64,000 bases of DNA, from the NCBI GenBank assembly GCA_037379345.1, contig CM074519.1, forward strand, positions 40,964,851 to 41,028,850, given 5' to 3'. Positions 1 to 18,804 of the stretch are shown in pieces. Numbering within the stretch: position 1 is the stretch's first letter; each line of letters starts with the position of its first letter. Origin of the DNA: Perna viridis. Taxonomy: Eukaryota. The notes beneath the pieces are model-generated. The model was not told where the DNA came from. It made no database searches and saw only the letters and a program-made list of their open reading frames with translations. The position numbers and the translations under genes were made by a program.

Positions 1-351
1 TACCAGAAAATAAAATGGCAGATCGTAAACAATGCTTCACAAGTCAATAAAATTGTGCATATTATGCCAAAATTCACTTGACATATTCAAGCTAAATTTC
101 TTAAAATGTAGGGAACATATTTTTAATGTATGATGTTAAGGGATGTGTTACTAAATAACAAGTTGGCTGGTTAACTTTCCTTGGAACTGGCCAATCAAAT
201 GACGGTCGCCAAATTGACAAGTATAAGCAAATGAGAACTCACCAAAATACATATCTACTTGTATTTGACAAATCTTCAGTTTTGAAGGAATGACTTTATC
301 ACATGTACGAGTATATACTTTTTGACAATAAAAATTACTCCTTTATGCTTG

Positions 352-816
352 TGTGGCAGGACGGCCTACCTGCGTTTTAGTAGTTTTGAGGTTAAAATCG
401 CCAGTTAATTGACTGGGCTAAAGGATTAATTCTTTCGCAGAATCGGTTTGTTGCTGGCTTGTCACTGAGCAGTCTAGGGTTTGATCCTTGGTGGCGGAGT
501 ATAATTTTGTGAGTCAAATCATGCTCTCCCGTGACATTTGGCGCCCAACTAAAAAACCCACAGGGTTTGGTTAGCTATAGAGGTAATGTTAGAGTCGTTC
601 GTGATACGAAGACTCTTAAGGTGGGGGAAATGTGGCAGGACAGCCTACCCGTGTTGTAGTGGGTAGTGAGGTTTAAATAGACAGTTAATTGACTTGGCTA
701 AAGGATTAATTCTTTAGCCGAATAGGTTTGTCGCTGGCTAGTCACCGAGTGGTCTAGGGTTCGATCCTCAGTGGCGGAGTATAATTTTGTGAGTCAAATC
801 ATGCTCTCCCGTTACA
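352..816 (+). mobile_element. Complete TRIM (miniature non-autonomous LTR retrotransposon) with tRNA-like sequence in its LTRs (Helenus-like), in UNC119 intron 1
   Basis: LTR1 352-536 and LTR2 631-816 both run TGTGGCAGG...CTCTCCCGT(G/T)ACA. PBS TGGCGCCCAAC at 539-549 is complementary to the 3' end of tRNA-Lys. PPT AAGGTGGGGGAAA at 618-630. 4-bp TSD CTTG at 348-351 and 817-820. No coding capacity. Confidence 0.92.
711..779 (+). promoter_or_regulatory. tRNA-derived Pol III internal promoter (A and B boxes) inside the TRIM 3' LTR
   Basis: A-box-like TAGCCGAATAGG at 715-726, B-box GGTTCGATCC at 758-767, and CTAGTCAC resembling a tRNA-Asp(GTC) anticodon loop. A degraded equivalent is present in LTR1. 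Confidence 0.7.
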
Positions 817-1206
817 CTTGCCTTGCACTAAACTTAAAGGCATATGCCTTCCTCATTTGAAGTAAATATATTCCAGGAACATCTAAATAAATGCAGAAGA
901 CATGACATACATGTATCTGTTGGATCTGGGACATTAATATGAAATACATGTATTAGGGTGACAATAGTGTGAATAGACCAGATAACAGATTGGTAACACT
1001 CTATTAAGAACATTTTTCTGAGGAGCTCAAGGTCTTGTCCTGATGCTAACATTCCAGTCATATGATTTGATATATAATGAAACAAGGAAGGGAGTTTTTA
1101 TGAAACAATAAATGAAAGAGGAAACAGTGACTCATGTCATGAATCAATATATAAACTTCCACAGAACGGACATGCTAAAAAGAATTTGTTCTAACATTAA
1201 ACTCAC

Positions 1207-1369
1207 TTTCTGTAATTTTTGTTAGTCTTAATACATCATCTGGACAAATATTGTCTTTTTTCAATAGCTCATCCTCTGAAATACATTCTAATTGGTGACC
1301 TTTGTCTTTATTTTTCGCTTGCCGAGACAGAAAACCACCTCCTTTCTTTTTGCCTGTAGTGGCGCTCAT
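1207..1369 (-). CDS. UNC119: UNC-119 homologue, first coding exon (gene continues beyond the window start)
   Basis: MSATTGKKKGGG...ISEDELLKKDNICPDDVLRLTKITE resembles the UNC119/UNC119B N-terminus (EQELL..DTI.PEHVLRLSRVTENYLC). The exon ends in a phase-1 donor A|GTGAGT (1206-1201) exactly where the 'N' of ITEN is expected. Confidence 0.88.
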
Positions 1370-2231
1370 GATTAAATAATCGAGTCAGATAAAAAGGTGG
1401 AAACAAGAAAATATATCTGCTATAGCATGATAAAGACGTAATACAGCAACAGGCCAACAGCTCAGTAAATAAAGTAAAATAGAAATCACAAGTGCAAGCG
1501 TCTATCTCCAATTATGCTGAATGGCGGCGATGGCAACAGGAATTATGGGAAAATTGTCATTTCCGATAATGCTAGAACCCGTCGAACTTCTCGAATGAGA
1601 AATAAAAAAATTTAAAAAATCTGTAATATTACATGTTAAAAGTAGGTGAACAATTAAGTAATAAATAAGTGATTGAATAAATAATAATAAACATGATAAT
1701 TGATAAATAGATCACTTAAAAATAGTGGGCTGAACTATTTTTTTAAATGGAGGCAAGATTATTTCACAACTGAGATCATACGAAATTAAAACATTCACAG
1801 CAATGATGCCATTTAAAACAAAAATGAATTTTCGTTTAAAGTTTGAATTTTATATATAGTCCTGTTCAGTGATGTTTTAAGCAGTTCAATCTAGAATTGA
1901 CTGTCATAAGTTGAAGATTAATTATTTCCATTTCACTGTATGCATGGTGTATCTGGACAAGAGTAAGAAATTTATTTATTTTCCAGGAGGTGTGGGCCAG
2001 AAATAATATTTTGAACTTTACAAGTCCAGAATTTTTATTTCCACCCCGAGAGTCAAATGGTCTTCCCCTTATGTATAGAATACTGTATCGTGAAATTATT
2101 CAGCGCAAAGTTAGCAACAACGTAAGAATTAAAATATTAAAATTCTTGACAGTTTATGTTCTAGATTTTGATCTTAGCGGAACCTTAAGAAATTTGAAAT
2201 TGCTCCGATTTTTTTTGTCAGACAGTAAAAA

Positions 2232-2380
2232 AGTTGCTCATTTACTTTTGTTACTTTGTATGTATGATTTTAGTTACTTTATGTTCTTTGTTGTGTATGT
2301 CTGTTTTCCATGTCTGGTCTTTGTACCTGGATTACATTCTTTTGATTACCGCTATAACCTTGGTTCCCTTGATTACTCTT
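2232..2380 (+). mobile_element. 3' terminal fragment of the Penelope-like (Naiad-type) family
   Basis: GTTGCTCATTTAC...GGTTCCCTTGATTACTCTT is nearly identical to the tail of the RT-bearing copy at 34972-35119. Confidence 0.85.
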
Positions 2381-2969
2381 CCTCCTGTTGCAACCCCTTT
2401 CCCCAAATTAAATAATAAATAAGTCTTCAAGAACAAATATTTATTAAGTAGTAAATCAAAATATCCATCAGGGCTTCCGCAGACACCGCCTTAAATTAGC
2501 CTTCCAATATCCTTCGTATTTGTTCCAAATTCTCTAATCGAATTTTTTTACATAAACCCAACTTTTCTGTACTGTCATGACCCTTAATGATAATTGTATT
2601 GTTTTATTAGATGTGCTATGTTTATTATTGTTTAACATTCATCTTAATGCGTGTTGATTGCTTTGCTTATAATTTTTAAATGTGTAATTGATTCTGTAGA
2701 GTTACAGGTGAATGTCCTAAATTCTCACCTGTAATTATTAATAGTTAAATACTGCCATGTTAAAAGCATGCTGACTTAATACTTGACTGATTCCAGTACT
2801 ATATAAGCTAGGGTTAATCATTGTAAGTCGATCAGTCTCTAGAAACACACAGAGAAGAGTGAACCTATGCCAGAACTACACGGTAATTATCACTTAATTA
2901 AATATGACAAGTGAAACCGTTTTAATTACTAATTAAGGGCTGAACCATTTACCACATACACCACAGAAC

Positions 2970-3180
2970 AATGGTAAACATCTAACCATGGTTTCGTGGT
3001 AAGCATTTCACCATAGTTCGTGGTAAACATTACACCATACTTGTGGTTAACATTTCACCATAGTTCGTGGTTGACATTTAACCATAGTTTTGTGGTTAAC
3101 ATTTCACCATCATTTGTGGTAACCATAAACCATTATCGTGGTAAACATTTAACCAACACCAGTGGCAAAATCATTCCATA
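2970..3180. repeat. ~24-bp tandem repeat, about 9 copies (TGGTAAACATTTCACCATAGTTCG)
   Basis: Direct reading. Each unit has a TGGT...ACCA inverted stem. Confidence 0.85.
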
Positions 3181-3828
3181 ACCACTATCTTTGGTCACAT
3201 TCCCCCACGACTTTTGGTTCACATTAAAACTACTAAGATGGCGACTTTACCCACAAACATGATAATACTGACCACAACCTAAGGTTAATTGAATCACTCT
3301 TTCATTATAGAATCACCATCAGTCAAGTCTAGTCAACATTAGAAGTCCATCTGTCATAAAATGTATCTGGACTGAATACAATCATTACAGTTATTGAAGA
3401 AAAACTTTTTTCTAGGAGAAGTGATGTGTTGGAAATTTCATTACCTTTCTATTTTTATTTTCATATTTTTTTTGTAATAAATCTTATAAATAAAAAAAAT
3501 ATCGAATAAAAATTTAAAGTTGATGATTTTTGATACACACCTCTTGCAACATTTCCCAAACTATTTATTACTCCGTACGCAAGTCACACTGCTGTTTTAT
3601 CGGAATAGGCTAGCGAGCTCCAGGGAGCGCTATATGAATTTAACAATTATTGTAAGACTTGACATGAATGTCATTTTCATTTAAATAATATACCGTTATT
3701 ATCATAATAATAATGATATCCTGTAAATATATCTTAAACAAATTGCATTTAAATATTACAACTTTTTAAATGTAGGTTGAACAAACATTACTTTGACACA
3801 TGTATGAAGTTTTTATGTTACTTTGGTT

Positions 3829-4008
3829 ATATCTTACTTCGTTAATTGATTGACACATTTACAGGTTAATTAAATATCTTACTTCGTTAATTGATAGACA
3901 CATTTACAGGTTAATTTTATATCTTACTTCGTTAATTGATAGACACATTTACAGGTTAATTTTATATCTTACTTCGTTAATTGATAGACACATTTACAGG
4001 TTAATTAA
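3829..4008. repeat. 45-bp tandem repeat, 4 near-identical copies
   Basis: ATATCTTACTTCGTTAATTGATAGACACATTTACAGGTTAATT(TT/AA) repeated four times. Confidence 0.95.
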
Positions 4009-4895
4009 ATAACATAAACCTGTCAAAGGATCCTTAATTATATGTTTATTTTGCTAGTAGGCGTTCGGGGAACACACCATTTGGACTAAAAGAGTCTATT
4101 TTTCTGCCACCGAGGCTTTATCGTCTCCAGCAAAGGACGAATGATTCTTTATTTTATATGAAGGTGGACTCAATAGTCCGAAAGCTGAACTACCTAGCAA
4201 GCCTGAATTGAAGAATGAAGACACTGCTCGCTTCACATAGAAATGCCTTTCAACAAGGAAGCACAACCCCAATTTTAAATAATGTAGTCGTTCATAACAA
4301 TCTACATTTCTAAAGTATCTGTTAAATGAAATTGACATTGTGAGTACTTGAGTGTAGATCTTACATCATACTAAAAGTACTTTGTCGGAATTTTTAATTC
4401 AGGAAGTGAATAATAAGTGTTCTCGTGCACACTTCAATCATAGATTGTATTAATTCATTTATAAACTCTTATATTTCACGAGTACCAGTGTTGCTATGTC
4501 TACATTAATAACATGATAAGCTCTTCACATACAGAGATGGACCTAGAAATATTTGCAGACTATCATTTACTATCATTTATTAATTTTTGCCTTAATTAAG
4601 CATGGGGTGATTTTCCAATATGAAAGAGGGAGTCAAACGCTCGAAGCCCTCCTCTGGATCCGCCATCGGTATGAAAATTCAAAACATATTTGAGCTGACA
4701 TTTTCATCCATGTGTGGTTGTTGTCTCTATGATATGCATTCCCGTTATGGTAAAAAAGAATAGGAAGAATAAGTACCTAAAATTTTGTTTTTCAATATTT
4801 AACAGCAGAGACAAAGGCGGCTACACCAAGTATGCTTAGGTGAACATAAATAAATGTAAACACGACAGCAACACTATGAAGTAGTTTAAAATGTT

Positions 4896-7800
4896 CCAAT
4901 GACAGCAACACCATCACCATGTAGTATTCTAAGGCGTACCAATAGCCGCAACACCACCACCATGTAGTATTCTAAGGCGTACCAATAACAGCAACTTCAA
5001 CACCATGTAGTATTCTAAGGCGTACCAATAGTATCCTGAGACGTACCAATTGCAGCAACACCAACCCCATGTTGGATTCTAGAATGTACCAATAGCAGCA
5101 ACACCAAAACTATGAAGTATACTAAGGTGTACCAATAGTAGCAACATCAACACCATATTGTATTCCTAGGCATACCAACGCCATGTAGTATTCGAATGCG
5201 TACCAATAGCAGCAACACCAACGCCATGTAGTATTCTAAGGCGTACCAATAGCAGCAACACCAACACCATGTAGTATTCTAAGGCGTACCAATTGCAATA
5301 ACATCAACACCATGTAGTATTCCTAGGCATACCAATTGCAGCAACACCAACACCATATAGTATTCTAAGGCGTACCTATTGCGGCAACCCAACCACGATA
5401 TGATATTCTAAGGCATTCCAATTGCAGCGGCTCCAACGTCATGTAGAATTCTAAGGCATACCAATAGCAGCGACACCAACAACATGTAGTATCCAAAGGC
5501 GTTACAATGGCAATAACACCAACACCATGTAGTATTCTAAGGTGTACCAATAGCAGCAACACCAAAAACATGTAGTATCCTAAGGCGTAACAATGGCAAT
5601 AACACCAACAACATGTAGTATTCTAAGACGTACCAATGGCAATAACATCAACACCATGTAGTATTCCTAGGCATACCAACTGCAGCAACACCAACGCCAT
5701 GTTGTATTCTAAGGCGTACCAATAGCACCAACTTCAACAGCATGTAGTATTCTAAGGCGTACCAATAGCAGCAACACCAACGCCATGTAGTATTCTAAGG
5801 CGTACCAATAGCAGCAACACCAACGCCATGTAGTATTCTAAGGCGTACCAATAGGAGCAACACCAACCCCATGTTGTATTCTAAGGCGTACCAATAGCAG
5901 CAACACCAACGCCTTGTGATGTATTCTAAGGCGTACCAATAGCACCAACTTCAACACCATGTAGTATTCTAAGGCGTACCAATAGCAGCAACACCAAAGC
6001 CATGTAGTATTCTAAGGCGTACCAATAGCAGCAACACCAATGCCATGTAGTATTCTAAGGCGTACAAATAGCAGCAAAACCAACACCATGTAGTATTTTA
6101 AGGCGTATCAATGGCAATAACATCAACACCATGTAGTATTCCTAGGCATACTAATTGCAGCAACACCAACGCCATGTTGTATTCTAAGGTGTACCAATAG
6201 CAGCAACACCAACAACATGTAGTATTCTAAGGCGTAACAATGGCAATAACATCAACACCATGTAGTATTCTAAGGTGTACCAATAGCAGCAACACCAACA
6301 ACATGTAGTATTCTAAGGCGTACCAATTGCAGCAACACCAACGCCATGTTGTATTCTAAGGCGTACCAAGAAAAGCAACACCAACACCATGTAGTATTCT
6401 AAGGCGTATCAATGGCAATAACATCAACACCATGTAGTATTCCTAGGCATACCAATTGCAGCAACACCAACGCCATGTTGTATTCTAAGGCGTACCAAAA
6501 GCAGCAACACCAACAACATGTAGTATTCTAAGGCGTACCAATTGCAATAACATCAACACCATGTAGTATTCCTAGGCATACCAATTGCAGCAACACCAAC
6601 ACCATATAGTATTCTAAGGCGTACCTATTGCAGCAACCCAACCACGATATGATATTCTAAGGCATTCCAATTGCAGCGGCTCCAACGTCATGTAGAATTC
6701 TAAGGCGTACCAATAGCAGCAACACCAACAACATGTAGTATCCATAGGCGTAACAATGGCAATAACACCAACACCATGTAGTATTCTAAGGTGTACCAAT
6801 AGCAGCAACACCAAAAACATGTAGTATCCTAAGGCGTAACAATGGCAATAACACCAACAACATGTAGTATTGTAAGGTGTACCAATAGCAGCAACACCAA
6901 ACCCATGTAGTATCCTAAGGCATAACAATGGCAATAACACCAACAACATGTAGTATTGTAAGGTGTACCAATAGCAGCAACACCAAAACCATGTAGTATT
7001 GTAAGGTGTACCAATAGCAGCAACACCAAAAACATGTAATATCCTAAGGCGTAACAATGGCAATAACACCAACAACATGTAGTATTCTAAGACGTACCAA
7101 TGGCAATAACATCAAAACCATGTAGTATTCCTAGGCATACCAATTGCAGCAACACCAACGCCATGTTGTATTCTAAGGTGTACCGATAGCACCAACTTCA
7201 ACACCATGTAGTATTCTAAGGCGTACCAATAGCAGCAACACCAACGCCATGTAGTATTCTAAGGCGTACCAATAGCAGCAACACCAACGCCATGTAGTAT
7301 TCTAAGGCGTACCAATAGCAGCAACACCAACGCCATGTAGTATTCTAAGGCGTACCAATAGCAGCAACACCAACCCCATGTTGTATTCTAAGGCGTACCA
7401 ATAGCAGCAACACCAACGCCTTGTGATGTATTCTAAGGCGTACCAATAGCACCAACTTCAACACCATGTAGTATTCTAAGGCGTACCAATAGCAGCAACA
7501 CCAAAGCCATGTAGTATTCTAAGGCGTACCAATAGCAGCAACACCAATGCCATGTAGTATTCTAAGGCGTACAAATAGCAGCAAAACCAACACCATGTAG
7601 TATTCTAAGGCGTATCAATGGCAATAACATCAACACCATGTAGTATTCCTAGGCATACTAATTGCAGCAACACCAACGCCATGTTGTATTCTAAGGTGTA
7701 CCAATAGCAGCAACACCAACAACATGTAGTATTCTAAGGCGTAACAATGGCAATAACATCAACACCATGTAGTATTCTAAGGTGTACCAATAGCAGCAAC

Positions 7801-10800
7801 ACCAACAACATGTAGTATTCTAAGGCGTACCAATTGCAGCAACACCAACGCCATGTTGTATTCTAAGGCGTACCAAGAAAAGCAACACCAACATCATGTA
7901 GTATTCTAAGGCGTATCAATGGCAATAACATCAACACCATGTAGTATTCCTAGGCATACCAATTGCAGCAACACCAACGCCATGTTGTATTCTAAGGCGT
8001 ACCTATGGCAATAACACCAACAACATGTAGTATTCTAAGACGTACCAATGGCAATAACATCAAAACCATGTAGTATTCCTAGGCATACCAATTGCAGCAA
8101 CACCAACGCCATGTTGTATTCTAAGGTGTACCGATAGCACCAACTTCAACACCATGTAGTATTCTAAGGCGTACCAATAGCAGCAACACCAACGCCATGT
8201 AGTATTCTAAGGCGTACCAATAGCAGCAACACCAACGCCATGTAGTATTCTAAGGCGTACCAATAGCAGCAACACCAATGCCATGTAGTATTCTAAGGCG
8301 TACCAATAGCAGCAACACCAACCCCATGTTGTATTCTAAGGCGTACCAATAGCAGCAACACCAACGCCTTGTGATGTATTCTAAGGCGTACCAATAGCAC
8401 CAACTTCAACACCATGTAGTATTCTAAGGCGTACCAATAGCAGCAACACCAAAGCCATGTAGTATTCTAAGGCGTACCAATAGCAGCAACACCAATGCCA
8501 TGTAGTATTCTAAGGCGTACAAATAGCAGCAAAACCAACACCATGTAGTATTCTAAGGCGTATCAATGGCAATAACATCAACACCATGTAGTATTCCTAG
8601 GCATACTAATTGCAGCAACACCAACGCCATGTTGTATTCTAAGGTGTACCAATAGCAGCAACACCAACAACATGTAGTATTCTAAGGCGTAACAATGGCA
8701 ATAACATCAACACCATGTAGTATTCTAAGGTGTTCCAATAGCAGCAACACCAACAACATGTAGTATTCTAAGGCGTACCAAGAAAAGCAACACCAACACC
8801 ATGTAGTATTCCTAGGCATACCAATTGCAGCAACACCAACGCCATGTTGTATTCTAAGGCGTACCAATAGCAGCAACACCAACAACATGTAGTATTCTAA
8901 GGCGTACCAATTGCAGCAACACCAACAACATGTAGTATTCTAAGGCGTACCAATTGCAGCAACACCAACGCCATGTTGTATTCTAAGGCGTACCAATAGC
9001 AGCAACACCAACAACATGTAGTATTCTAAGGCGTACCAATTGCAATAACATCAACACCATGTAGTATTCCTAGGCATACCAATTGCAGCAACACCAACAC
9101 CATATAATATTCTAAGGCGTATCTATTGCAGCAACCCAACCACGATATGATATTCTAAGGCATTCCAATTGCAGCGGCTCCAACGTCATGTAGAATTCTA
9201 AGGCGTACCAATAGCAGCAACACCAACAACATGTAGTATCCAAAGGCGTAACAATGGCAATAACACCAACACCATGTAGTATTCTAAGGTGTACCAATAG
9301 CAGCAACACCAAAAACATGTAGTATCCTAAGGCATAACAATGGCAATAACACCAACAACATGTAGTATTGTAAGGTGTACCAATAGCAGCAACACCAAAC
9401 CCATGTAGTATCCTAAGGCATAACAATGGCAATAACACCAACAACATGTAGTATTGTAAGGTGTACCAATAGCAGCAACACCAAAACCATGTAGTATTGT
9501 AAGGTGTACCAATAGCAGCAACACCAAAAACATGTAATATCCTAAGACGTACCAATGGCAATAACATCATAACCATGTAGTATTCCTAGGCATACCAATT
9601 GCAGCAACACCAACGCCATGTTGTATTCTAAGGTGTACCGATAGCACCAACTTCAACACCATGTAGTATTCTAAGGCGTACCAATAGCAGCAACACCAAC
9701 GCCATGTAGTATTCTAAGGCGTACCAATAGCAGCAACACCAACGCCATGTAGTTATCTAAGGCGTACCAATAGCAGCAACACCAACCACGATATGTAGTA
9801 TTCTAAGGCGTACCAATTGCAGCAACACCAACCAACGCCATGTAGTATTCTAAGGCGTACCAATAGCAGCAACACCAACGCCATGTAATATTCTAATGCG
9901 TACCAATAGCAGCAACACCAAAGCCATATAGTATTCTAAGGCGTACCAATAGCAGCAACACCAACGCCATGTAGTATTCTAAGGCGTACCAATAGCAGCA
10001 ACACCAACGCCATGTAGTATTCTAAGGCGTACCAATAGCAGCAACACCAACACCATGTAGTATTCTAAGGCGTACCAATAGCACCAACTTCAACACCATG
10101 TAGTATTCTAAGGCGTACCAATTGCAGCAACACCAACACCATGTAGTATTCTAAGGCGTACCAATAGCAGCAACTTCAACACCATGTGGTATTCTAAGGC
10201 GTACCAATAGCAGCAACTTCAACACCATGTAGTATTCTAAGGCGTACCAATAGTATCCTGAGACGTACCAATAACGCCATGTTGGATTCTAGAATGTACC
10301 AATAGCAGCAACACCAACACCATGTTGTATTCTAAGGCGTACCAATAGCAGCAACCCAAGTACGATATGGTATTCTAAGGCATTCCAATTGCAGCGGCTC
10401 CAACGTCATGTAGAGTTCTAAGGGGTACCAATAGCAGCAACACCAACAACATGTAGTATCCTAAGGCGTACCAATGGCAATAACACCAACAACATGTAGT
10501 ATTCTAAGGCGTACCAATGGCAATAACACCAACAGCATGTAGTATTCTAAGGCGTACCAATGGCAATAACACCAACAACATGTAGTATTCTAAGGCGTAC
10601 CAATGGCAATAACACCAACAACATGTAGTATTCTAAGGCGTAACAATGGCAATAACACCAACAACATGTAGTATTCTAAGGCGTAACAATAGCAGCAACT
10701 TCAACACCATGTAGTATTCTAAGGCGTACCAATGGCAATAACACCAACAACATGTAGTATTCTAAGGCGTACCAATGGCAATAACACCAACAACATGTAG

Positions 10801-10933
10801 TATTCTAAGGCGTAACAATGGCAATAACACCAACAACATGTAGTATTCTAAGGCGTAACAATAGCAGCAACTTCAACACCATGTAGTATTCTAAGGCGTA
10901 CCAATAGCATCAACACCAACGCCATGTAGTATT
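4896..10933. repeat. Satellite array, 43-bp monomer, ~140 copies, with higher-order repeats
   Basis: Consensus ATGTAGTATTCTAAGGCGTACCAATAGCAGCAACACCAAC(G/A)CC with period 43 (e.g. ATG at 7206 and 7249). Diagnostic variant blocks recur at ~5375, ~6624 and ~9122. Confidence 0.97.
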
Positions 10934-10936
10934 TGT

Positions 10937-11674
10937 TGTGAAATACGTTTTCACATATATTAATTATCCTGAAGTATTTTGGGAATTATAACAGTTTTGG
11001 GAAGACAAATGTGTACTTCGGGAGAATGGTTTAGCATTGTCTTACCATTTAAGTTATTAATTATTATCATTTTAACAGAAATCTGTCGCTGTTTTGACGT
11101 CTACATTTTCCACCAAAGTAGAGTTATCGTTCTTTAGGCGTACATTAATTTTTATACCAAGACTGGTTAGATACGGGTTTAACTTCCGTGTTTTGTGTTA
11201 ATTAGGTGTTTCTACTCAAAACAAAGTTGGTAAGTTCAAAATTCGACTGTCCCAGGGATCGGCTGTATCGTTCCCTTGACCTGTTTATTTGCCACGTTTG
11301 GACTTGTGGATATTTATACAGTCAACGATAAGCTTTATAGCTCTTTTTATACACATCTTCCTGTATTTCAAGTGTTTTTAGACGAGGAATATCGCAACGC
11401 TTTTACTTGGTGGTGCTGTTTTTGTTTAGCCCAACCCCGGCCTAAATTTGATATTTTATTATTATCACTAATAATTCTTTAGTGTTAGATTTATACTTTT
11501 GTCTGACATGCAGGTTCTTTGACTTGGGTAACGGAATTTGTATATTGTTTTTGGATTGTCAAAATTATATTCCTGCATAATAAACTCTTCATTTTTATAC
11601 GTGTTACATGCAGCTTCTACGCCTATCAGTTTCTGATTAATTCGTAGATTTCCGCTCGGTTTCCTAGTTTTACA
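10937..11674 (+). repeat. Gypsy 5' LTR (738 bp, TG...CA)
   Basis: Starts TGTGAAA and ends TTTTACA 4 nt before the PBS. The first ~270 bp match 18805-19055. Confidence 0.88.
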
Positions 11675-11678
11675 ATAT

Positions 11679-11696
11679 TGGTGGCAGCGGTGGGAT
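11679..11696 (+). promoter_or_regulatory. Primer binding site, tRNA-Leu
   Basis: TGGTGGCAGCGGTGGGAT is the 18-nt complement of the 3' end (ATCCCACCGCTGCCACCA) of metazoan tRNA-Leu(AAG/UAG). Confidence 0.9.
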
Positions 11697-11965
11697 ACCC
11701 AGTTCTCATCAGTTTGTGTAGCTATATTTGACTGACGATTTTTGTAAAATAGTAGTTGCTGCATGGTTTTTCATTGCTGAAGGACTGAATTGTTCGATGA
11801 AATATCTCTTAACTGGAACATGAATTCGTTTAGTTGTGAGTAAATTTGACTTTTTTGTATTCGGAAACTGAATAGTTTTAAATACGTTTGGTAGAGAATT
11901 CTACCATAGTTTTTTTTTAAAGAGAATTAGTTGTAGAAATTTAACAGTAAAATAGTTAAATAATT

Positions 11966-13678
11966 ATGGCGGATAGTCCTGTGGCTCATTCTAGTTCTCG
12001 TACTGGTGTTATTACTATATCTCAGTTTTCAAAAAAGGGGGAAAATATAGTATATGAGATATCAAACTTTAACTATATTTCTCAAGCTGAGATATCACAG
12101 TTGGTAAGTAGTCACAGTAGTGGATCACTTCATGAGAGATGCTTAAGTGAAGGTGCATTAAATATAACCAGTTCTGAGGTAAATACAGAGTCTAGTGATG
12201 TTAGACAAGAGAATATGAAGCTCAAACAGCAGTTATCAGATGTGAGTAATCAACTAGCACAGACAGAAGATAGTCTAGAACATGCTGAGAACGATGTAGC
12301 AGAGACAAAAAGAGAACTTTTTGACACTATGCAGAGTTAGTTGAAGGTTAAAAAAAATGTGTCAAATTATGAAAAGCTCTTGAATGATGCAAATGCGCAA
12401 AATTGGCATTTGAAACAAGACATTTAGAAGGTAAAAACTGAGAAAATCAGGTTGCGGTACGACATGAAAACAGATCTTGACCAGGTAAAGAATGAAAATG
12501 TCAAACTAGAATACGAGATGAAAAACAAAGATTCAGAGATACAACGTCTGACATTAGAGTTGAGAAATGTGTCAAGGGCAGGTAATTGGAGTTCCACTGA
12601 GAATAGTAACTCAGCATTACAGAGAAACGCTGGTGCACAGAGGGTAGATTATGGTCACGGAAATGAGTTTTATGATACTAGGGGTTACATTCAGACAGGT
12701 ATGGGTAACCATAGTAGCAGTATTAGCAGTTACGAAGCCTTCATCCTCACGGGATTCAGGTAGTGTTAGTCATTCAGAGGAACCCAAGTTCAGGCTGCCA
12801 TATTTTAATGGTAAAAGTGATTTCCAGAGTTTTTGGGCTATCTTTGAGACTGGAATAAAAAAGTTCAATTGGGACAATGACAAGCAATTAGAACATCTTA
12901 TGTGTAGCTTAAAAGATGAAGCTTTGGTATTTGTGACCAAATTGCCTGTACCTGTAAAAGGTAATATCAGAAACCTTTATACTGCACTGGACCAGAAATA
13001 TGGTGATTTTCTGTTACCTGAGCACTATCGGGAACAGTTAAATCAGATAAAAAAGAACAGTAAAGAAACCATGATTGAGTATGCAAACAGAGTAGAGGAG
13101 ATTGTGAATAAGGCATACCCAGAACTAAGTCCACCTCATTTAGTGACCACACTTACTATTGAGCACATTTTAAGAGGGTTGATAGATCAGAACCTATCAT
13201 ATGAGGTAAGAACAAAACAACCAAAGACGATTGATGAAACTTTGCAACTCATAACCTGGCATGAGTGTTGTAGAAATGGAAACAAACGCCAATTGAGTAT
13301 AAGCAAATAGAGGAAGATGACTGATGAAATTTGTAAGGTTGGTAATAGTAAGCAATTTGTCACAGAAGACAAATTCAAAGAGGTGAAGAATCAGATAAGC
13401 AATTTAACAGGTAAAATAAGTAAATTAGCTGCTACATTGCAACAAAATGTTGGTAACAGAGGTAATACAAAAGTCGTGAGGAAAAAAGGGCACGATATGC
13501 TGAAATTACTTGTTAAAATGCAATGAAAAGGGTCATACAAGCAGATTTTGTCGTCAAAACAAGGAGAAAAGAGGTAACTCAGGACAGAGTAATGATGATA
13601 AGAGAAATAGGATCGAAGAAAATTATGGTAAATGCAAAGGCAAGAATGTGAGTGCTGATGATAAGTCCTTAAACTAGT
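11966..13678 (+). pseudogene. gag: Gypsy gag, disrupted (coiled coil, capsid-like domain, CCHC knuckle)
   Basis: Coiled-coil ORF fragments, then KFRLPYFNGKSDFQSFWAIFE...LMCSLKDEAL capsid-like motif. A broken C-x2-CNEKGHTSRFC knuckle lies at ~13510-13552. Ends TTAAACTAG. Confidence 0.85.
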
Positions 13679-13828
13679 TGGGGCTAAGGCTGACGGCCAA
13701 GACTTGGCCCAGGTAACTATTGATGGAAATGAACCTCTGACACATGGCTTGGATAATTGTTCAAAGGTTGGTTTTCCACGTAGATACTCTCACTGTTCCT
13801 ACTGAGGAGGAAACATTCTAGTGTTGTA

Positions 13829-16800
13829 GTGAATGATAGTAGTAATTCAAAGCCTTCCGGGGTTTTGGAATTAGCTGATGAAAATCCTTGTAAATTTGTT
13901 GATTTTGATGGTGAACTGGGTGATGCAGATATTGTTATAGATAGAGTTAGAGAAATTACATTGAAGGTTCCTGTTGATGGTGCAGTGGTTAATGCTGTTG
14001 TCGATACAGGGGCAGAGGTGACTGTTATGAGCAAGTCTGCTTATTATCGAATTCCTGAGGTAAATCGTCCATGTCTTTATCAGGCTCGGAGAAACCTGGT
14101 TGTAGCAGAGGCTGGAAGGAAAATGAGTACTTCAGGTGTTGCTGATGTTTCAGTACAAATTTGTTCTTTACAATTTGATTAGTCATTTTTTGTTGCACCA
14201 ATAGGGGACGATATACTACTTGTTTGTGACGTTATTGATGACAAGGATATCACCATAAATACAAGGAGAGGTTTGCAGGTTGAAAGAGAATGGGTTAATT
14301 GTGATGTCACTCGTAGGGCTGATAAAGTTGCACGTGTACGTTTAAAGGAAACGGTGACTATTCCTCCTAACAGTGAAGTTATTCTACCAGGTCGTAGTGT
14401 TAACTCTGAAGTTATGGATACTAGATATTGTAGCATTGAGCCTCTATTTGAAGATGACATGAATTTGTTGGTTGCTAGATGTTTAGTAGACCCTTATCAG
14501 AAAACTGTACCAGTTCGCATTGTAAATCTTGAGAATACTCCTATCAAAATAAAGAAAAACTATTTGATTGGCGAGTTACATCCTGTAGTGCATTTTGAAA
14601 ATATTGATTCTGAGGTAAAGAATGAAACTTCAATGTATGATAATTCAATTGCTAATTCTATTAACCAACCGAATATATTTGATCCTTTTATTCCTGATGA
14701 TTGGAAGTGTAGTAAAATTTCTTCAGATTGTTTTGCTAATGAAAGAGATTTGGCCGAAGTTCCTAAAGTACCAGAACATTTTGTTGAGTCGTTTGATAAA
14801 AGTGCAGAGAAACTTGTTGATCAAAAACACAAGGTTAAGTTAGCTGAGGTTTTGTTGAATAATGCTAATGCCTTTGCTAAAACAAATTAGATCTTGGTTC
14901 TTGCTCAGTTATTTCACATAAAATTGATACCTCAGGGACAAGGCCTGTTAGACAGCCTTTAAGAAGGACACCTCGAGGTTTGGAAGGTGAGGAGGAAAAA
15001 TATTTGCAAGATCAAATTGCCAATGGAGTTGTTGTGCCATCTAAATCTAGTTGGGCCTCACCTATGTGCTTAGTTAGAAAAAAAGATATGTCAGTAAGGT
15101 GGTGTATAGATTATAGACGTCTTAATAATTGTACTATTAAAGATGCCTATCCCTTACCAAAAATTTTTATGTGCTTAGATTGTCTTGCTGATGCAAATGT
15201 TTTTTCTGTGATGGATTTACAGTCTGGCTATTGGCAACTTGAAGTGGCATCTGTAGATCGTCACAAAACGGCCTTTATTACAAAATATGGTCTGTTTGAA
15301 TACCCCAAAATGCCTTTTCGTCTTTGTAATGCCCCCTCAACCTTCCAAAGATATATGCAGTTAGTATTTAGAGGCATGCAATGGAAGACTCTTTTAATAT
15401 ATCTGGATGATATCATTTTATATAGTTCAAATCTTGATGAACATTTTGTCAAATTGATAGAAGTTCTGTCTCGCTTGAAAAATGCTGATTTGAAGCTTAA
15501 ACCATCCAAGTGTGAATTCATTAAAGATGAAGTTGTTTATTTGGGACACGTTGTTTGTAAAGAAGGTATTAAACCCAAACAAAAGATGATAGATTCTGTG
15601 AAAAATGGGAAAACACCTTGTTCAGTCAAGGAAGTTCAGAGATTTCTTGGGCTCTGTAACTATTACTGACAATTTGTATCAAAATTCAGTGAAGTCGCTT
15701 CTCCTCTTAGTTCACTGACAAAGAAAGATGTTCTATTTGAGTGGTCTAAAGCTTGTAATGAGTCCTTTCTGTTACTGAAAAAGGCATTATGTGAAGCTCC
15801 TATACTAGCATATCCTCTTTCTAAAGGGTTATTCATCTTAGCTACAGACGCTTCTAATGTAGGAATAGGCGCAGTCTTATCTCAAGTTCAAAATAACAAG
15901 GAAAAAGTAATTGCATTTGGCTCAAAGAAACTTGATAAGCCACAACAACGCTATCGCGTCATTAGACGTGAGCGTCTTGCTGTCATTACTTTCATTCACC
16001 AGTTTCGCCACTTTCTAATGGGGAGGAAATTTCTGTTACGAACAGATCATGGCTCTCTTTGTTGGCTATTTAGTTTTAAAAATCCACAAGGTCAATTAGC
16101 TAGGTGGATAGAGACTCTCTCACAATATAATGTGTAATATAAGATGCTGAAGAACCTCTTTGGAAACATCAAATCGAGGGAAAAGTTGATCCTCATTGCT
16201 CTTATTTTCAATCTCTAAATGATGAATGGTCAGATTTTAAAACTGATATTGATGACGTTGGAAATTTAGGTCATACCAGTGATATAATTCGAGTTGTAAC
16301 CAGGAGTCAAACATAAACTCGTCCTCAATGTAACTGGCTACAAGGTCATTCAGATGAGGAAGTTGAAATCTTTCAAAGGGAAGATGAAGTTTTGAAATAT
16401 GTCCATGAGTGGTTTGACAGTGGTCAGCCTAGCAGAGATGATGCTGCTGCATTTAGCCCCGCTGTTCGGAATTTATTGATTAAACTTTAATCATCTAGAG
16501 AAACAAAATGGTGTCATTTTCCAGAAGCGTTCTCTTTCAGACATTTCTGTACCTTCTTATCAGCTTTTGGTACCTAAAATATAAAGAAAGAGGTCATTAA
16601 AGATTGTCATGATGCTATGTGCGCGGCACATTTTGGAATTAGTAAAACTGTTTCAAAGACAAAAAGTCACTTTCATTGGTATAAAATGAGTGAAGATGTG
16701 AAATTACATATCAAAAGTTGTGATGTTTGCAACAGAGTTAAGTCATTTAATATAAAAACAAAGGCTGCCCTTCAAAAGTATTTAGTTGGTCATCCGATGG

Positions 16801-17659
16801 ATCGCATTGGGATTGATATCATTGGTCCTCTACCAAAAAGTCAAAGAAACAATAAATATATATTAGTGATCGGAGATCATTTTACTTGCTGGATGGAAGC
16901 GTACCTCCTTCCAAACCAACAAGGTGAAGTTGTTGCTGAGAAACTGGTCCATGAGTTCATATCTCGGTTTGGAACTTTTGAATTACATTCTGATAGAGGT
17001 ACTAATTTTTAGAGCAATCTTTTTGCTGAGATTTGCAAATTATTTGATATAAAGGAAACAAGAACTACATCTTATAGGCCTTGTTCTAATGGAATAATAG
17101 AAAAATTTAATGGGACCTTACAAAAAAGGATCCGTAGCTTTGTTGATAAGAATGTTCGTACCTGGGATTCTTATATTGGAATTCTTATGTCTGCTGATAG
17201 AAGCCTCCCACATCCAGCTACGGGGTTTTCTCCGAATATGCTTATGTTCGGTAGAGAGGTTTTGATGCCAAACCAGTTGATGTTTCCTCTGCCTAAGGGC
17301 CATTCAAATACTGATACTGATACTTACTGAGCTCATGTTACAGACAAATTGGAGGATGTCTACCATTTAGCTAGACAACACTTAAATTCGACTGCTGCGG
17401 TACAGAAATAGAATTATGATACTCCTCTTTCACAGACCCAATTTTCTAAGGGTTCCCTTGTCTATAAGTTCAACAGTTCTTCTAAGAAGCTGGAAGAAAA
17501 GTGGTCTGGTCCATATGTTGTTATTGATACTTTGGGTCCAGTTCTGTATAAGATTCAATTTAGACGGTTGATACTGTTCATCATGACAAATTGAAGTTGT
17601 TTCTATCAAACGATATTCCTTCTTGGGTCCAGGACGTCCGAAAGAAGATTTTATATTAG
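13829..17659 (+). pseudogene. pol: Gypsy pol, disrupted (protease, RT, RNase H, integrase)
   Basis: Protease AVVDTGAEVTV; RT WCIDYRRLN..DAYPLP and YLDDII; RNase H TDASNVGIGAVLSQ (~15844); integrase H..AAHFG..C..C, GIDIIGPLP and HSDRGTNF. Multiple internal stops. Confidence 0.93.
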
Positions 17660-17731
17660 CTGATTTAAGTCAGGGGTACCTGCTGTCAGTATTTGTTCAT
17701 TTAAAAATAATTAAACTTACTGTTAGAAGTA

Positions 17732-18484
17732 ATGTCTGATGTGTACGTCTGTAATTGGAATGATTGCCTCGTGGAATTGAATAAGAGAGATATGGTTCAT
17801 CATGTACTGGTAACTCATGTGGAGGAGGAAAGAGTCCCTTATTACTGTACCCTGTGCCATTATAGAACTACAACTTTGAGATTGTTGGAGAGAGATGTGT
17901 CAACATATAGGAAGCATAAAGATGCCATTGCAGATTTGACAGATAAAGAACAAGATTTTTTGAAAGTATTCCTTATTCCGTATTTTGTTGTTCTCGGTAC
18001 AGACCGTTCTGTTGACGCCATTCTAAAATCAGCATTGCCAGAAGAAGCTAAAAGCGACTCTGAGGGTGAGGCGAAAGACAGCTCAGAATTCGAATTTCAG
18101 ATCCGGAAATTTAGCACAGAGTTCTCTTTTTCAACCATCGAATGCCAGACTGATGGAACATTTCAAAACTACAAAGAATTAAAAGCTGAAATGAATATAC
18201 TAAAGGGTTCACATCAGGCAGAGCTAACTAGATTTGCTGATTTTATAGCCGGAAATGAAACTACACTCAAGCATAGATCAGATGAAGTTAAATTTCTGAA
18301 GGAAGAACTTGTGAAAAAGGATGTCAAAGTCCGCGTTCTTGAAAGGAATGTGAGACACAAGGACAATGAAATCGAAATTTTGAGACGGAAACTTAGATTT
18401 TATGAGAATCAAGACTATCAATTATATAAGAACAATAAAAAATTTGATTCCGAAAGAGATGAACCAGAAAAAAAAAGAAGATGA
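17732..18484 (+). CDS. Gypsy accessory ORF3: tandem C2H2-type zinc fingers plus C-terminal coiled coil (250 aa)
   Basis: CNWNDC-x11-H-x4-H, then VPYYCTLC-x12-D-x6-H (second finger has Asp at the expected His). Heptad-rich EVKFLKEELVKKDVKVRVLERNV...EIEILRRKL. Lies between integrase and PPT. Confidence 0.75.
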   Translation: MSDVYVCNWNDCLVELNKRDMVHHVLVTHVEEERVPYYCTLCHYRTTTLRLLERDVSTYRKHKDAIADLTDKEQDFLKVFLIPYFVVLGTDRSVDAILKSALPEEAKSDSEGEAKDSSEFEFQIRKFSTEFSFSTIECQTDGTFQNYKELKAEMNILKGSHQAELTRFADFIAGNETTLKHRSDEVKFLKEELVKKDVKVRVLERNVRHKDNEIEILRRKLRFYENQDYQLYKNNKKFDSERDEPEKKRR

Positions 18485-18769
18485 AAAGCGTTGTCCAGAA
18501 ACTGTTTTAAGTTTATTTATATTTCTTGTGGATATTTGTAAACAATGTGTGTTGATATTGTTACCACAGTATTTTATATTGTACTATTTTTATTTTGAGC
18601 AAAATTTTGTTCATATAATTTAAGTCGATTATTTAAAGGTAACTACATCTTCGTAGGTACTTTAAGGGGGTGAATGCCTCAGCACTTACTTGGATATTTC
18701 ATTTGTTCTAAAGAAAAAAGATTACAATAAATTTTCATTATCGTTTCTTCAAAGAAATTTTTCCTTTTG

Positions 18770-18803
18770 AATTTCGAGGACGAAATTATTTTTTTTGAGG
18801 GGG
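18770..18803 (+). promoter_or_regulatory. Pre-PPT hairpin and polypurine tract of the Gypsy element
   Basis: AATTTCGAGGACGAAATT hairpin (18770-18787), a T-run, then GAGGGGG (18797-18803) immediately before the 3' LTR. Confidence 0.85.
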
Positions 18804-18804
18804 T

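What the first reader, a model, noticed from the sequence alone, without database searches (positions are those of the whole stretch)
352..816. 465-bp TRIM carrying a tRNA-derived Pol III promoter in its LTRs
Seen: two ~185-bp TG..CA LTRs, a tRNA-Lys PBS, a PPT, a 4-bp TSD (CTTG), and A/B boxes with a tRNA-Asp-like stretch inside the LTR. Known: TRIMs with small-RNA-derived LTRs are rare. Cassandra carries 5S rRNA, and from memory the recently described Helenus group has tRNA-like LTRs and 4-bp TSDs in animals. Inference: this is a SINE/LTR hybrid transcribed by Pol III and mobilised in trans by a Gypsy element. Its autonomous partner is not the tRNA-Leu-primed Gypsy in this window.
Basis: partly seen in the sequence, partly recalled or inferred. 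Interest (0 to 1): 0.78.

Follow-up and report, generated by a model that had tools for sequence, protein, structure and literature searches.

The report
Old Helenus-type miniature LTR retrotransposon copy
This is a real but old and decayed copy of a small non-coding jumping element (a "Helenus" TRIM, with tRNA-derived promoter boxes in its repeats) of a lineage already published for mussels, so it is largely ordinary; the one useful addition is recombinant copies that point to its likely Gypsy helper.

Summary
Window 352-816 is a 465-bp TRIM with these parts:
- LTRs of 185 and 186 bp, TG..CA ends, 87% alike.
- An 11-nt tRNA-Lys PBS, a PPT and a CTTG target-site duplication.

The genome holds about 510 LTR hits and about 109 internal-region hits. 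Of 30 fetched copies, 19 have perfect 4-bp duplications.

The element is homologous, block by block, to the published mytilid Helenus-1 families (Kojima 2024, PMC10886601). It is therefore a member of a known lineage, in a genome that is probably Perna viridis, a species not on that paper's list. No earlier scan note mentions Helenus.

Box A and box B sit at tRNA spacing and a T4 run follows them. No tRNA is detectable with Rfam or ARAGORN, and no cloverleaf forms. "tRNA-Asp-like" is not supported. Pol III transcription remains an inference: the RNA contigs show family copies only inside longer transcripts.

New here: a degraded Gypsy-order family with 1-kb LTRs and an 18-nt tRNA-Lys PBS shares the U5-end/PBS block with the TRIM. 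At least five chimeras join the two exactly there. One is a composite flanked by a GTAA duplication. This points to co-packaging, and so to the helper family. Interest is low to moderate.

The parts
348..351 (+). 5' copy of the 4-bp target-site duplication (CTTG)
   Evidence: Read. The same four bases lie at 817-820. 19 of 30 other copies have their own perfect 4-bp duplication.
352..536 (+). 5' LTR (185 bp, TG..CA)
   Evidence: Direct repeat with 631-816. 87% identical to the 3' LTR.
416..439 (+). 5' LTR copy of a 24-nt near-palindrome (10-bp stem, TTAA loop) that overlaps the start of box A
   Evidence: 277 of 300 stem cells are paired across 30 copies. The same palindrome is seen by eye in the published Mytilus, Modiolus and Limnoperna sequences.
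435..446 (+). Box A position in the 5' LTR, mutated in this copy (TCGCAGAATCGG)
   Evidence: Most copies carry TAGCCGAATCGG here.
478..488 (+). Box B position in the 5' LTR, mutated in this copy (GGTTTGATCC)
   Evidence: Most copies carry GGTTCGATCC.
505..508 (+). T4 run after the tRNA-like block in the 5' LTR (candidate Pol III terminator)
   Evidence: Present at this place in 27 of 30 copies.
537..630 (+). Internal region (94 bp, no coding capacity)
   Evidence: 85-95% identical in other copies.
539..549 (+). [quoted passage not shown]
   Evidence: Only match in the window. The same PBS is listed for the tRNA-Lys group of bivalve Helenus in Fig. S2 of PMC10886601. The 26-mer of Helenus-1_MyCo-I matches 538-563 with 1 mismatch.
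618..630 (+). Polypurine tract AAGGTGGGGGAAA
   Evidence: Kept in 17 of 30 copies exactly. A 37-mer made of the Helenus-1_MyCo-I / _MyGa-I internal end followed by the Helenus-1_MoPh LTR start matches 611-647 with 3 mismatches.
631..816 (+). 3' LTR (186 bp, TG..CA)
696..719 (+). 3' LTR copy of the 24-nt near-palindrome GGCTAAAGGA-TTAA-TTCTTTAGCC
   Evidence: 285 of 300 stem cells are paired across 30 copies. Predicted hairpin.
715..726 (+). Box A (TAGCCGAATAGG; TRGCY...GG type)
   Evidence: Pattern match. Majority form. Aligns by eye with TAGCTCAGTCGG and TAGCTCATTCGG of published mytilid Helenus-1 LTRs.
758..768 (+). Box B (GGTTCGATCCT), 44 nt from the first T of box A to the G before TTC
785..788 (+). 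T4 run after the tRNA-like block in the 3' LTR (candidate Pol III terminator; inferred 3' end of R)
   Evidence: Present in 29 of 30 copies. No other shared T4 run exists in the element.
817..820 (+). 3' copy of the target-site duplication (CTTG)
1207..1538 (-). Context: first exon of a host gene. The TRIM lies antisense in the intron that starts at 1206.
   Evidence: RNA contigs from 4 studies cover 1207-1538 at 100% and then run on into other sequence. 831-1206 is empty. GTGAGT donor on the minus strand at 1206-1201.

Best explanation
Window 352-816 is an old, CpG-decayed insertion of a non-autonomous LTR retrotransposon of the Helenus (TRIMp3) kind. It belongs to the lineage published as Helenus-1 in Mytilidae.

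**Shown**
- It has TRIM anatomy and a 4-bp target duplication.
- It belongs to a dispersed family of several hundred LTRs with many solo LTRs and some tandem LTR-internal arrays.
- It is homologous to the published mussel Helenus-1 families.
- Box A, box B and a T4 run are retained at tRNA spacing, while the tRNA fold itself is lost.

**Inferred mechanism**
- Pol III starts about 8 nt upstream of box A, at about 428 in the 5' LTR.
- It reads through the weak T4 run of the 5' LTR and stops at the T4 run of the 3' LTR (785-788).
- This gives an RNA with an R of about 80 nt, a U5 of about 28 nt and a U3 of about 76 nt.
- tRNA-Lys primes reverse transcription.
- The proteins come in trans from a Gypsy-order family that has 1-kb LTRs and an 18-nt tRNA-Lys PBS.
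- That family's U5 end plus PBS is nearly identical to the TRIM's, and its RNA was at times copied together with TRIM RNA. This produced chimeras joined in that block.

This copy is itself dead: both boxes in its 5' LTR are mutated and its LTRs are 13% diverged. I give about 0.9 to the identity, about 0.6 to the named Gypsy family (or a close relative) as helper, and about 0.5 to Pol III as the polymerase that makes the template RNA.
For: **Anatomy and family**
- Anatomy.
- Family size: 864 candidates. An LTR 30-mer gives 510 hits at <=3 mismatches, and the PPT/LTR junction 31-mer gives 109 hits.
- 19 of 30 copies have perfect 4-bp duplications. LTR pairs within copies are 86.6-97.3% identical, median 92.2%.

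**Homology to published Helenus-1 families**
- Helenus-1_MoPh, _MyCo, _MyGa and _LimFor were read in the paper's DataS1.
- Their dimensions are 182-188 bp LTRs and 92-125 bp internal regions, against 185/94 here.
- Short published strings hit the window with 1-3 mismatches and 0.00 expected by chance.

**Promoter anatomy**
- Box A ... box B match.
- The majority motifs and the T4 run are at a fixed place.

**Helper**
- The C12 element (L043/L044) has RVT_1, then RT_RNaseH_2, then rve.
- It has 1026-bp LTRs, TGTAAC..CCCGTTACA, and the PBS TGGCGCCCAACGTGGGGC.
- Its U5 31-mer has 123 hits in the genome.
- Four loci have a Gypsy-type LTR, then the TRIM internal region, then a TRIM LTR. One locus has the reciprocal order, a TRIM LTR followed by the Gypsy leader. 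All are joined inside the shared CTCCCGTTACA-T(n)-GGCGCCCAAC block.
- The L076 composite at 678-3285 has TRIM LTRs at both ends and about 1.3 kb of Gypsy leader/gag plus a 3'-terminal fragment (last ~110-145 nt) of the Gypsy LTR inside. It is flanked by GTAA on both sides.
Against: **Against Pol III transcription**
- No direct evidence of Pol III transcription exists.
- The contigs of four RNA runs show family copies at 85-95% likeness, mostly embedded in longer contigs that run on into unrelated flanks. There are no start or end pile-ups.
- Contigs cannot show RNA ends in any case.
- The absence of extra T4 runs between the two terminators is not significant: 28% of shuffles have none.
- Conservation among copies is uniform at about 90% and does not single out the boxes.
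- No tRNA is detectable by covariance model or ARAGORN. The tRNA origin therefore rests on homology to better-preserved published relatives, compared by eye plus short-pattern tests.

**Against the named helper**
- The only coding copy seen is broken into short frames.
- The next RT relatives are 64-70% identical at protein level.
- Most chimeras are rearranged and lack duplications I could read.
- DNA-level recombination at the 24-nt block cannot be excluded for those.
Confidence: 0.85

Rival explanations
1. The element is an ordinary TRIM whose LTR merely carries a dead relic of a tRNA or SINE. The template RNA would be made by Pol II or by read-through from host genes, and the boxes would persist only by descent.
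For: - The tRNA fold is gone.
- The boxes are no better conserved than the rest of the element among copies.
- RNA contigs show copies inside longer host-like transcripts.
- T4 depletion is not significant.
Against: - Box A, box B, their spacing and the downstream T run are kept across four mussel genera, while the anticodon region between them differs freely (by eye).
- The only TATA-like string (TATAAT, 780-785) sits about 30 bp from the LTR end. That would leave an R of a few bases, too short for strand transfer.
- Read-through RNAs lack a defined R.
Confidence: 0.3
2. The chimeras between the TRIM and the 1-kb-LTR Gypsy family arose by ectopic DNA recombination or nested insertion. On this reading they say nothing about a helper relationship.
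For: - Most chimeric loci are rearranged, carry extra insertions and lack readable duplications.
- The L045 flanks match at only 3 of 4 bases.
Against: - All junctions fall inside one 24-26-nt block shared by the two elements, and they occur in both orders. The spacer has 3 or 5 T's at different loci, so there were at least two independent events.
- The L076 composite is bounded by TRIM LTRs with an exact GTAA duplication. It contains a 3'-terminal fragment (last ~110-145 nt) of the Gypsy LTR directly upstream of the PBS, as expected from template switching during minus-strand synthesis.
- Ectopic recombination at 24 nt is improbable.
Confidence: 0.25
3. The structure is not a retroelement at all. 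It would be a local 280-bp tandem duplication or a satellite unit.
For: - The two repeats are 280 bp apart.
- Arrays of 3-4 LTRs with 280-bp spacing exist elsewhere (L011, L029).
Against: - There are hundreds of dispersed copies on all 15 large contigs, each with its own 4-bp duplication.
- The element has a canonical PBS, a PPT and TG..CA ends.
- A three-LTR array is itself flanked by a CAAC duplication.
Confidence: 0.01

Closest known systems
Helenus-1 families of Mytilidae (Helenus-1_MoPh, Helenus-1_LimFor, Helenus-1_MyCo, Helenus-1_MyGa; Kojima 2024, PMC10886601)
   Same: - Same layout and nearly the same dimensions: LTR 176-188 bp, internal 92-125 bp, 4-bp duplications.
- Same LTR start (TGTGACAGGACAGCCTA..) and same LTR end (..CATGCTCTCCGGTTACA).
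- Same PBS plus the extension AAAAACCCAC, and same PPT block (GACTCTTGAGGTGGGGGAAG).
- Box A and box B at the same places, followed by a T run.
- The same palindrome over box A.
   Different: - The sequence has diverged. k-mers of 11-16 nt from this LTR are absent from the paper's DataS1.
- Box A reads TAGCCGAATCGG instead of TAGCTCAGTCGG.
- The T-arm stem is eroded, to TAGGG/CTCGG.
- The probable host, Perna viridis, is not in the paper's species list.
Cassandra (plant TRIM with 5S rRNA-derived LTR sequence)
   Same: It is a TRIM whose LTRs carry an internal Pol III promoter and terminator from a small-RNA gene. The proposed RNA starts in the 5' LTR and ends in the 3' LTR.
   Different: It uses a 5S (type 1) promoter rather than a tRNA (type 2) promoter. 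It occurs in plants, makes 5-bp duplications, and has no sequence relation to this element.
tRNA-derived SINEs (SINE2)
   Same: They have box A and box B from a tRNA gene as an internal promoter, and they are non-autonomous.
   Different: SINEs have no LTRs, PBS or PPT, and they use LINE machinery. A tRNA-headed element noted at 30375-30647 of this window shows no significant similarity to the LTR.
biv-TRIM (Satovic et al. 2019, PMC6934838)
   Same: It is a TRIM found in bivalves including Mytilus, with solo repeats and tandem arrays.
   Different: biv-TRIM has no canonical PBS and no reported tRNA-derived boxes. It is a different family.

Membership tests
TRIM (terminal-repeat retrotransposon in miniature) | Two short direct terminal repeats (about 100-350 bp) with TG..CA ends, total length under 1 kb, and no coding capacity | tested here: met
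   LTRs of 185 and 186 bp, a 94-bp internal region, 465 bp in all.
TRIM (terminal-repeat retrotransposon in miniature) | A PBS directly after the 5' LTR and a PPT directly before the 3' LTR | tested here: met
   TGGCGCCCAAC lies 2 nt after the LTR. AAGGTGGGGGAAA abuts the 3' LTR.
TRIM (terminal-repeat retrotransposon in miniature) | Dispersed copies, each with its own target-site duplication | tested here: met
   19 of 30 copies have perfect 4-bp duplications of differing sequence. There are 510 LTR and 109 junction hits.
Helenus / TRIMp3 (Kojima 2024) | A tRNA-derived sequence in the LTR with box A (TRGCY ... YGG) and box B (GGTTC) | tested here: met
   The majority box A is TAGCCGAATCGG and the majority box B is GGGTTCGATCC, at tRNA spacing. 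They align by eye with the boxes of published mytilid Helenus-1 LTRs.
Helenus / TRIMp3 (Kojima 2024) | The LTR segment is recognisable as a tRNA by tRNA-finding software | tested here: not met
   No RF00005 hit at E<=10 in the window or in 20 loci. ARAGORN gives none at default or 90% thresholds. No cloverleaf forms. The paper itself reports that most Helenus tRNA-like parts are non-functional, so this is not a strict requirement.
Helenus / TRIMp3 (Kojima 2024) | Animal members make 4-bp target-site duplications | tested here: met
Helenus / TRIMp3 (Kojima 2024) | The PBS region is shared with an autonomous Gypsy element (animal members) | tested here: met
   The C12 Gypsy-order element shares CTCCCGTTACA-T(n)-GGCGCCCAAC and forms chimeras with the TRIM. 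Whether it is the functional helper is inferred.
Helenus / TRIMp3 (Kojima 2024) | Transcription by RNA polymerase III | not testable with these tools
   Only contigs of RNA runs were available. They show no RNA ends. This has not been shown experimentally in the original paper either.
Mytilid Helenus-1 lineage | Sequence homology over LTR ends, tRNA-like block, PBS extension and PPT block to Helenus-1_MoPh, _MyCo, _MyGa and _LimFor | tested here: met
   Published strings match at 538-563 (1 mismatch), at 799-816 (1 mismatch) and 519-536 (2 mismatches), and at 611-647 (3 mismatches), with 0.00 expected by chance. The rest was compared by eye. No formal full-length alignment was made, because the published sequences could not be loaded by reference.
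Cassandra | A 5S rRNA-derived sequence in the LTR | tested here: not met
   No 5S hit in the Rfam scans.

The most novel reading that the evidence does not exclude
The chimeras joined inside the shared U5-end/PBS block include a 2.6-kb composite with TRIM LTRs, Gypsy leader/gag and a 3'-terminal fragment (last ~110-145 nt) of the Gypsy LTR inside, and an exact 4-bp duplication. They would be footprints of template switching between co-packaged RNAs. If so, this is the first direct sequence evidence tying an animal Helenus to a specific Gypsy helper family, where the published evidence is PBS similarity only. In addition, the 24-26-nt palindrome that overlaps box A is kept in four mussel genera with a compensating one-base change. 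It may be a functional element of the LTR, such as a start-site or strand-transfer signal.
Probability: 0.45. Interest if true: 0.45.

Novelty: new member of a known kind. Interest (0 to 1): 0.27.

Why it matters
The finding mostly confirms a known kind. TRIMs with tRNA-derived Pol III boxes (Helenus) are already described in mussels, and this is one more species-level family, in a genome that is probably Perna viridis.

- **Annotation.** The LTRs should not be mistaken for tRNA genes or SINEs. The roughly 500 LTRs, many of them solo, are a source of Pol III-box-bearing sequence inside introns.
- **Helper lead.** The recombinant copies give a concrete, testable candidate helper family for an animal Helenus, and a way to study co-packaging from genome sequence alone. 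The published work has no such direct link for animals.

Tried and rejected
1. **Rfam cmscan at E<=10** on the window and on 20 family loci gave no tRNA or other relevant hit.
2. **ARAGORN** on the window and on 30 copies gave nothing at default or 90% thresholds. At 80% the calls disagree in isotype and place.
3. **RNA folding** of 706-782 gave no cloverleaf, z = -1.0.
4. **Conservation profile** across 30 copies is uniform, with dips only at CpG sites. It does not single out the boxes.
5. **T4-run depletion** between the two terminators is not significant: 28% of shuffles have none.
6. **Exact k-mers** of this LTR in the paper's DataS1 gave no match; only the PBS matched.
7. **RNA evidence** (look-up of sequencing runs and read laying):
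   - No run is on record as RNA.
   - Four probable RNA runs show the neighbouring host exon, but not this copy.
   - Other family copies appear inside longer contigs.
   - No start or end signal is visible. This is no verdict on Pol III.
8. **First partner candidate**, C4:13346967 (L034/L037), has a tRNA-Lys PBS but no second LTR and no long frame within 11 kb. I dropped it.
9. **PPT-side negative-pattern search** for a partner gave one hit, which was a TRIM variant.
10. **The tRNA-headed element** at 30375-30647 shows no significant similarity to the LTR.
11. **L022:630-790** is a diverged partial LTR, not a SINE.
12. **Earlier scan notes** hold nothing on Helenus or on a tRNA-Lys Gypsy.
13. 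**Fetching allowance.** No further Gypsy or TRIM copies could be read.
14. **Rules followed.** No consensus of the TRIM or of the Gypsy element was built. Only per-copy counts and short motifs were tabulated.
Full report
**1. The observation**

The sequence at 352-816 is as described.
- Two direct repeats, 352-536 (185 bp) and 631-816 (186 bp), begin with TG and end with CA.
- They share 162 of 186 aligned columns (87%) with one gap. Many of the 23 substitutions are at CpG sites.
- Between them lie 94 bp. This region starts, two bases after the LTR, with TGGCGCCCAAC (539-549) and ends with the purine run AAGGTGGGGGAAA (618-630).
[quoted passage not shown] It is listed as such for bivalve elements in Fig. 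S2 of PMC10886601.
- It occurs only once in the 64-kb window, even with one mismatch allowed.
- CTTG flanks the element on both sides, at 348-351 and 817-820.
- A combined box A / box B pattern at tRNA spacing matches once in the window, at 715-767 in the 3' LTR. None is expected in 100 shuffles.
- In the 5' LTR both boxes are mutated: TCGCAG for TAGCCG, and GGTTTGA for GGTTCGA.

**2. It is a family, and it transposed**
- A search of the window's own genome (723,115,551 bases, 46 contigs, hits on 15 large ones) found 864 first-look candidates. All 44 scored matches are full length at 85-90% identity.
- A conserved LTR 30-mer has 510 hits at up to 3 mismatches. The PPT/3'-LTR junction 31-mer has 109. 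Backwards controls gave 0. There are therefore many solo LTRs.
- In 30 fetched copies the LTR-internal-LTR layout is kept.
- 19 of the 30 have a perfect 4-bp duplication, each of different sequence. Two more do after a one-base boundary shift.
- Arrays with three or four LTRs at 280-bp spacing exist (L011, L029). The three-LTR array is itself flanked by CAAC.
- LTR pairs within copies are 86.6-97.3% identical, median 92.2%. The sampled copies are not recent, and the window copy (87%) is among the oldest.

**3. What it is**

Kojima (2024, PMC10886601) defined Helenus as TRIMs with a tRNA-derived sequence in the LTRs.
- He found 51 families in pteriomorph bivalves, with 4-bp duplications and PBSs for tRNA-Lys among others.
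- The mytilid families named Helenus-1 have LTRs of 176-193 bp and internal parts of 92-125 bp. This element has 185 and 94.
- I read their sequences in the paper's DataS1. They match this element block by block:
  - the LTR start;
  - a palindrome followed by box A;
  - box B;
  - a T run;
  - the LTR end (..CATGCTCTCCGGTTACA);
  - the PBS with the extension AAAAACCCAC;
  - the end of the internal part (GACTCTTGAGGTGGGGGAAG).
- Short published strings tested against the window hit only this element, each with 0.00 expected by chance:
  - a 26-mer of Helenus-1_MyCo-I at 538-563 with 1 mismatch;
  - the LTR-end 18-mer at 799-816 (1 mismatch) and 519-536 (2 mismatches);
  - a 37-mer made of the MyCo/MyGa-type internal end followed by the MoPh LTR start, at 611-647 with 3 mismatches.
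- The rest of the comparison is by eye, because the published sequences have no reference here and must not be typed in.
- Exact k-mers of this LTR are not in DataS1. This is therefore a diverged family of the same lineage, not one of the listed families.
- The assembly size and the 15 large contigs fit the published Perna viridis assembly: 723.49 Mb and 15 chromosomes (PMC11358141). The mytilid homology fits too. An earlier scan note also calls this genome probably molluscan.
- The species name remains an inference. Perna is not in Kojima's list.

**4. The tRNA-like part**
- I threaded the LTR on a tRNA. The T of box A is taken as position 8 (715). G53 then falls at 759, a spacing of 44 against 45 in a standard tRNA.
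- Among 60 LTRs the commonest forms are TAGCCGAATCGG for box A and GGGTTCGATCCTC for box B. These fit the TRGCY...YGG and GGTTC signatures given for Helenus.
- The fold is gone:
  - there is no acceptor pairing, and the T stem is reduced to TAGGG/CTCGG;
  - Rfam gives no tRNA hit at E<=10 in the window or in 20 further loci;
  - ARAGORN gives nothing at default or 90% thresholds and only inconsistent calls at 80%;
  - the segment folds no better than shuffles, z = -1.0.
- The anticodon region differs freely between the published genera. An isotype such as Asp therefore cannot be assigned.
- What is retained across Mytilus, Modiolus, Limnoperna and this genome is the pair of boxes, their spacing and (in most) a T run after them. 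That is what one expects if the promoter is under constraint and the tRNA is not.

**5. How it most likely works**

The model of the paper, and of Cassandra before it, is the best available.

*Inferred*
- Pol III starts just upstream of box A in the 5' LTR.
- It passes the first T4 run (505-508) in a fraction of rounds and stops at the T4 run of the 3' LTR (785-788).
- R would then be about 80 nt, U5 about 28 nt and U3 about 76 nt.

*Shown*
- The T4 run is at that place in 27 and 29 of 30 copies, and no other T4 run is shared.

*Not shown*
- That no further T4 run lies between the two terminators is not significant: 28% of shuffles have none.
- Copy-to-copy conservation is uniform.
- The RNA data do not help. 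Contigs of four probable RNA runs cover the neighbouring host exon (1207-1538) at 100% and leave the intron empty.
- They show other family copies at 85-95% likeness, mostly inside longer contigs that continue into unrelated flanks. They show no pile-ups of ends.

A Pol II start from the only TATA-like string (780-785) would leave almost no R. This argues against that rival but does not exclude it.

**6. The helper**

*The window's own Gypsy.* Its LTRs start at about 10939 and 18807. It has different LTR ends and no tRNA-Lys PBS.

*A candidate elsewhere.*
- I searched the genome for a tRNA-Lys PBS extended beyond the TRIM's 11 nt and found four sites.
- One, on contig 12 (L043/L044), is an LTR element of about 10 kb with these features:
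  - LTRs of about 1026 bp (TGTAAC..CCCGTTACA; the 3' LTR is cut short);
  - the 18-nt PBS TGGCGCCCAACGTGGGGC;
  - a G-rich PPT;
  - short broken frames carrying RVT_1, then RT_RNaseH_2, then rve, which is the Gypsy order.
- Its U5 end plus PBS reads CTCCCGTTACA, then T's, then GGCGCCCAAC. This is the same as the TRIM's except for two extra T's.
- Its LTR start (TGTAACGGAGG) resembles those of the mytilid Helenus-1 LTRs.
- Its U5 31-mer has 123 hits. 27 of 30 sampled are followed by unrelated flank, so they are solo or 3' LTRs. One is followed by the Gypsy leader and two by the TRIM internal region.

*Chimeras.*
- Four loci carry a Gypsy-type LTR, then the TRIM internal region, then a TRIM LTR: L045, L076, L077 and L078.
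- L076 also carries the reverse order: a TRIM LTR, then the Gypsy PBS and leader.
- The crossovers lie inside the shared block. Both the 3-T and the 5-T spacer occur, so there were at least two events.
- In L076 the two chimeric junctions belong to one 2.6-kb composite (678-3285), bounded by TRIM LTRs and by GTAA on both sides. Inside it, in order, are:
  - the Gypsy PBS, leader and about 1.3 kb of 5' internal sequence;
  - a 3'-terminal fragment (last ~110-145 nt) of the Gypsy LTR;
  - the PBS and the TRIM internal region.

*Reading of the chimeras (inferred).*
- This is the pattern expected from reverse transcriptase switching between a TRIM RNA and a Gypsy RNA at the PBS, with a jump at the 5' end of the Gypsy RNA.
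- The loci with a complete Gypsy LTR fit an intermolecular plus-strand strong-stop transfer through the shared PBS.
- Both mechanisms need the two RNAs in one particle. The inference is that this Gypsy family, or a close relative, supplied the proteins.

*Caveats.*
- The coding copy is broken.
- The next RT relatives are only 64-70% identical and mostly carry stops.
- Most chimeras are rearranged.
- I could not fetch more loci.

**7. Comparison and novelty**
- It works like, and by the tests above is a member of, Helenus/TRIMp3, specifically the mytilid Helenus-1 lineage.
- It is not Cassandra: there is no 5S sequence.
- It is not a SINE: it has LTRs, a PBS and a PPT.
- It is not biv-TRIM, which lacks a canonical PBS.
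- It is a new species-level member of a known kind.
- Two points seem not to be in the paper: the chimeras that point to a helper, and a 24-26-nt palindrome overlapping box A.
  - In this family the palindrome has a 10-bp stem and is kept in 92-95% of stem cells.
  - It is present by eye in the Mytilus, Modiolus and Limnoperna sequences, with a compensating one-base difference.
  - The paper contains no occurrence of 'hairpin' or 'palindrom'.

**8. Verdict**
- The family is old and this copy is dead.
- Interest is low to moderate.

Noticed in passing
window 696-719 and 416-439: A 24-nt near-palindrome (GGCTAAAGGA-TTAA-TTCTTTAGCC) has a 3' arm that includes the first five bases of box A. It is kept in 92-95% of stem cells in 60 LTRs. 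It is visible by eye in published Mytilus, Modiolus and Limnoperna Helenus-1 LTRs, with a compensating one-base difference (GAGCTA/TAGCTC against GGCTA/TAGCC). The Helenus paper does not mention it.
   Followed up: partly
L076:678-3285 (G000:C1:58899177-58901784): A 2.6-kb composite element is bounded by TRIM LTRs and an exact GTAA duplication. Inside, in order, are the Gypsy PBS, leader and about 1.3 kb of 5' internal sequence, a 3'-terminal fragment (last ~110-145 nt) of the Gypsy LTR, the PBS and the TRIM internal region. It looks like a multi-switch reverse-transcription product.
   Followed up: partly
L045 (G000:C3:38646000-38655999, minus strand), about 2723-5106 of the reverse complement: This locus has, in order: a Gypsy-type LTR, the TRIM internal region, a TRIM LTR, a PBS, about 240 nt, a PPT, and a second Gypsy-type LTR that is only 68-70% like the first. 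The flanks are TCAG and CCAG, a 3 of 4 match. Its origin is unresolved.
   Followed up: partly
window 1207-1538 (minus strand): This is the first exon of a host gene, with an ATG at 1370 and a GTGAGT donor at 1206-1201. RNA contigs of four studies cover it at 100%. The TRIM lies antisense in its first intron, 391 bp from the donor. A further transcribed piece lies at about 1905-2000.
   Followed up: partly
L011 and L029: These are tandem LTR-internal-LTR arrays of the TRIM with 3 and 4 LTRs at 280-bp spacing. The 3-LTR array is flanked by a CAAC duplication.
   Followed up: partly
L031 (G000:C1:59019805-59022829): A TRIM LTR and PBS are followed directly by a long (TA)n microsatellite in place of the internal region.
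   Followed up: no
window 9000-10990 and 21600-23900: There are long arrays of a 43-bp tandem repeat just upstream of the window's Gypsy 5' LTR. Arrays of a 32-bp repeat lie downstream of that element.
   Followed up: no
window 10939-19060: This is a Gypsy-like element with LTRs about 87-92% alike that start with TGTGAAATACG. There is no tRNA-Lys PBS. I found no pol frame of 250 aa or more, so the copy is degraded.
   Followed up: partly
window 25580-27889 (minus strand): A 769-aa open frame carries LRR_8 and TIR domains, so it is Toll-like-receptor-like.
   Followed up: no
window 46721-47716 and 51253-52437: A 331-aa frame carries FLYWCH and MULE transposase domains. A 394-aa frame on the minus strand carries a galactosyltransferase domain.
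   Followed up: no
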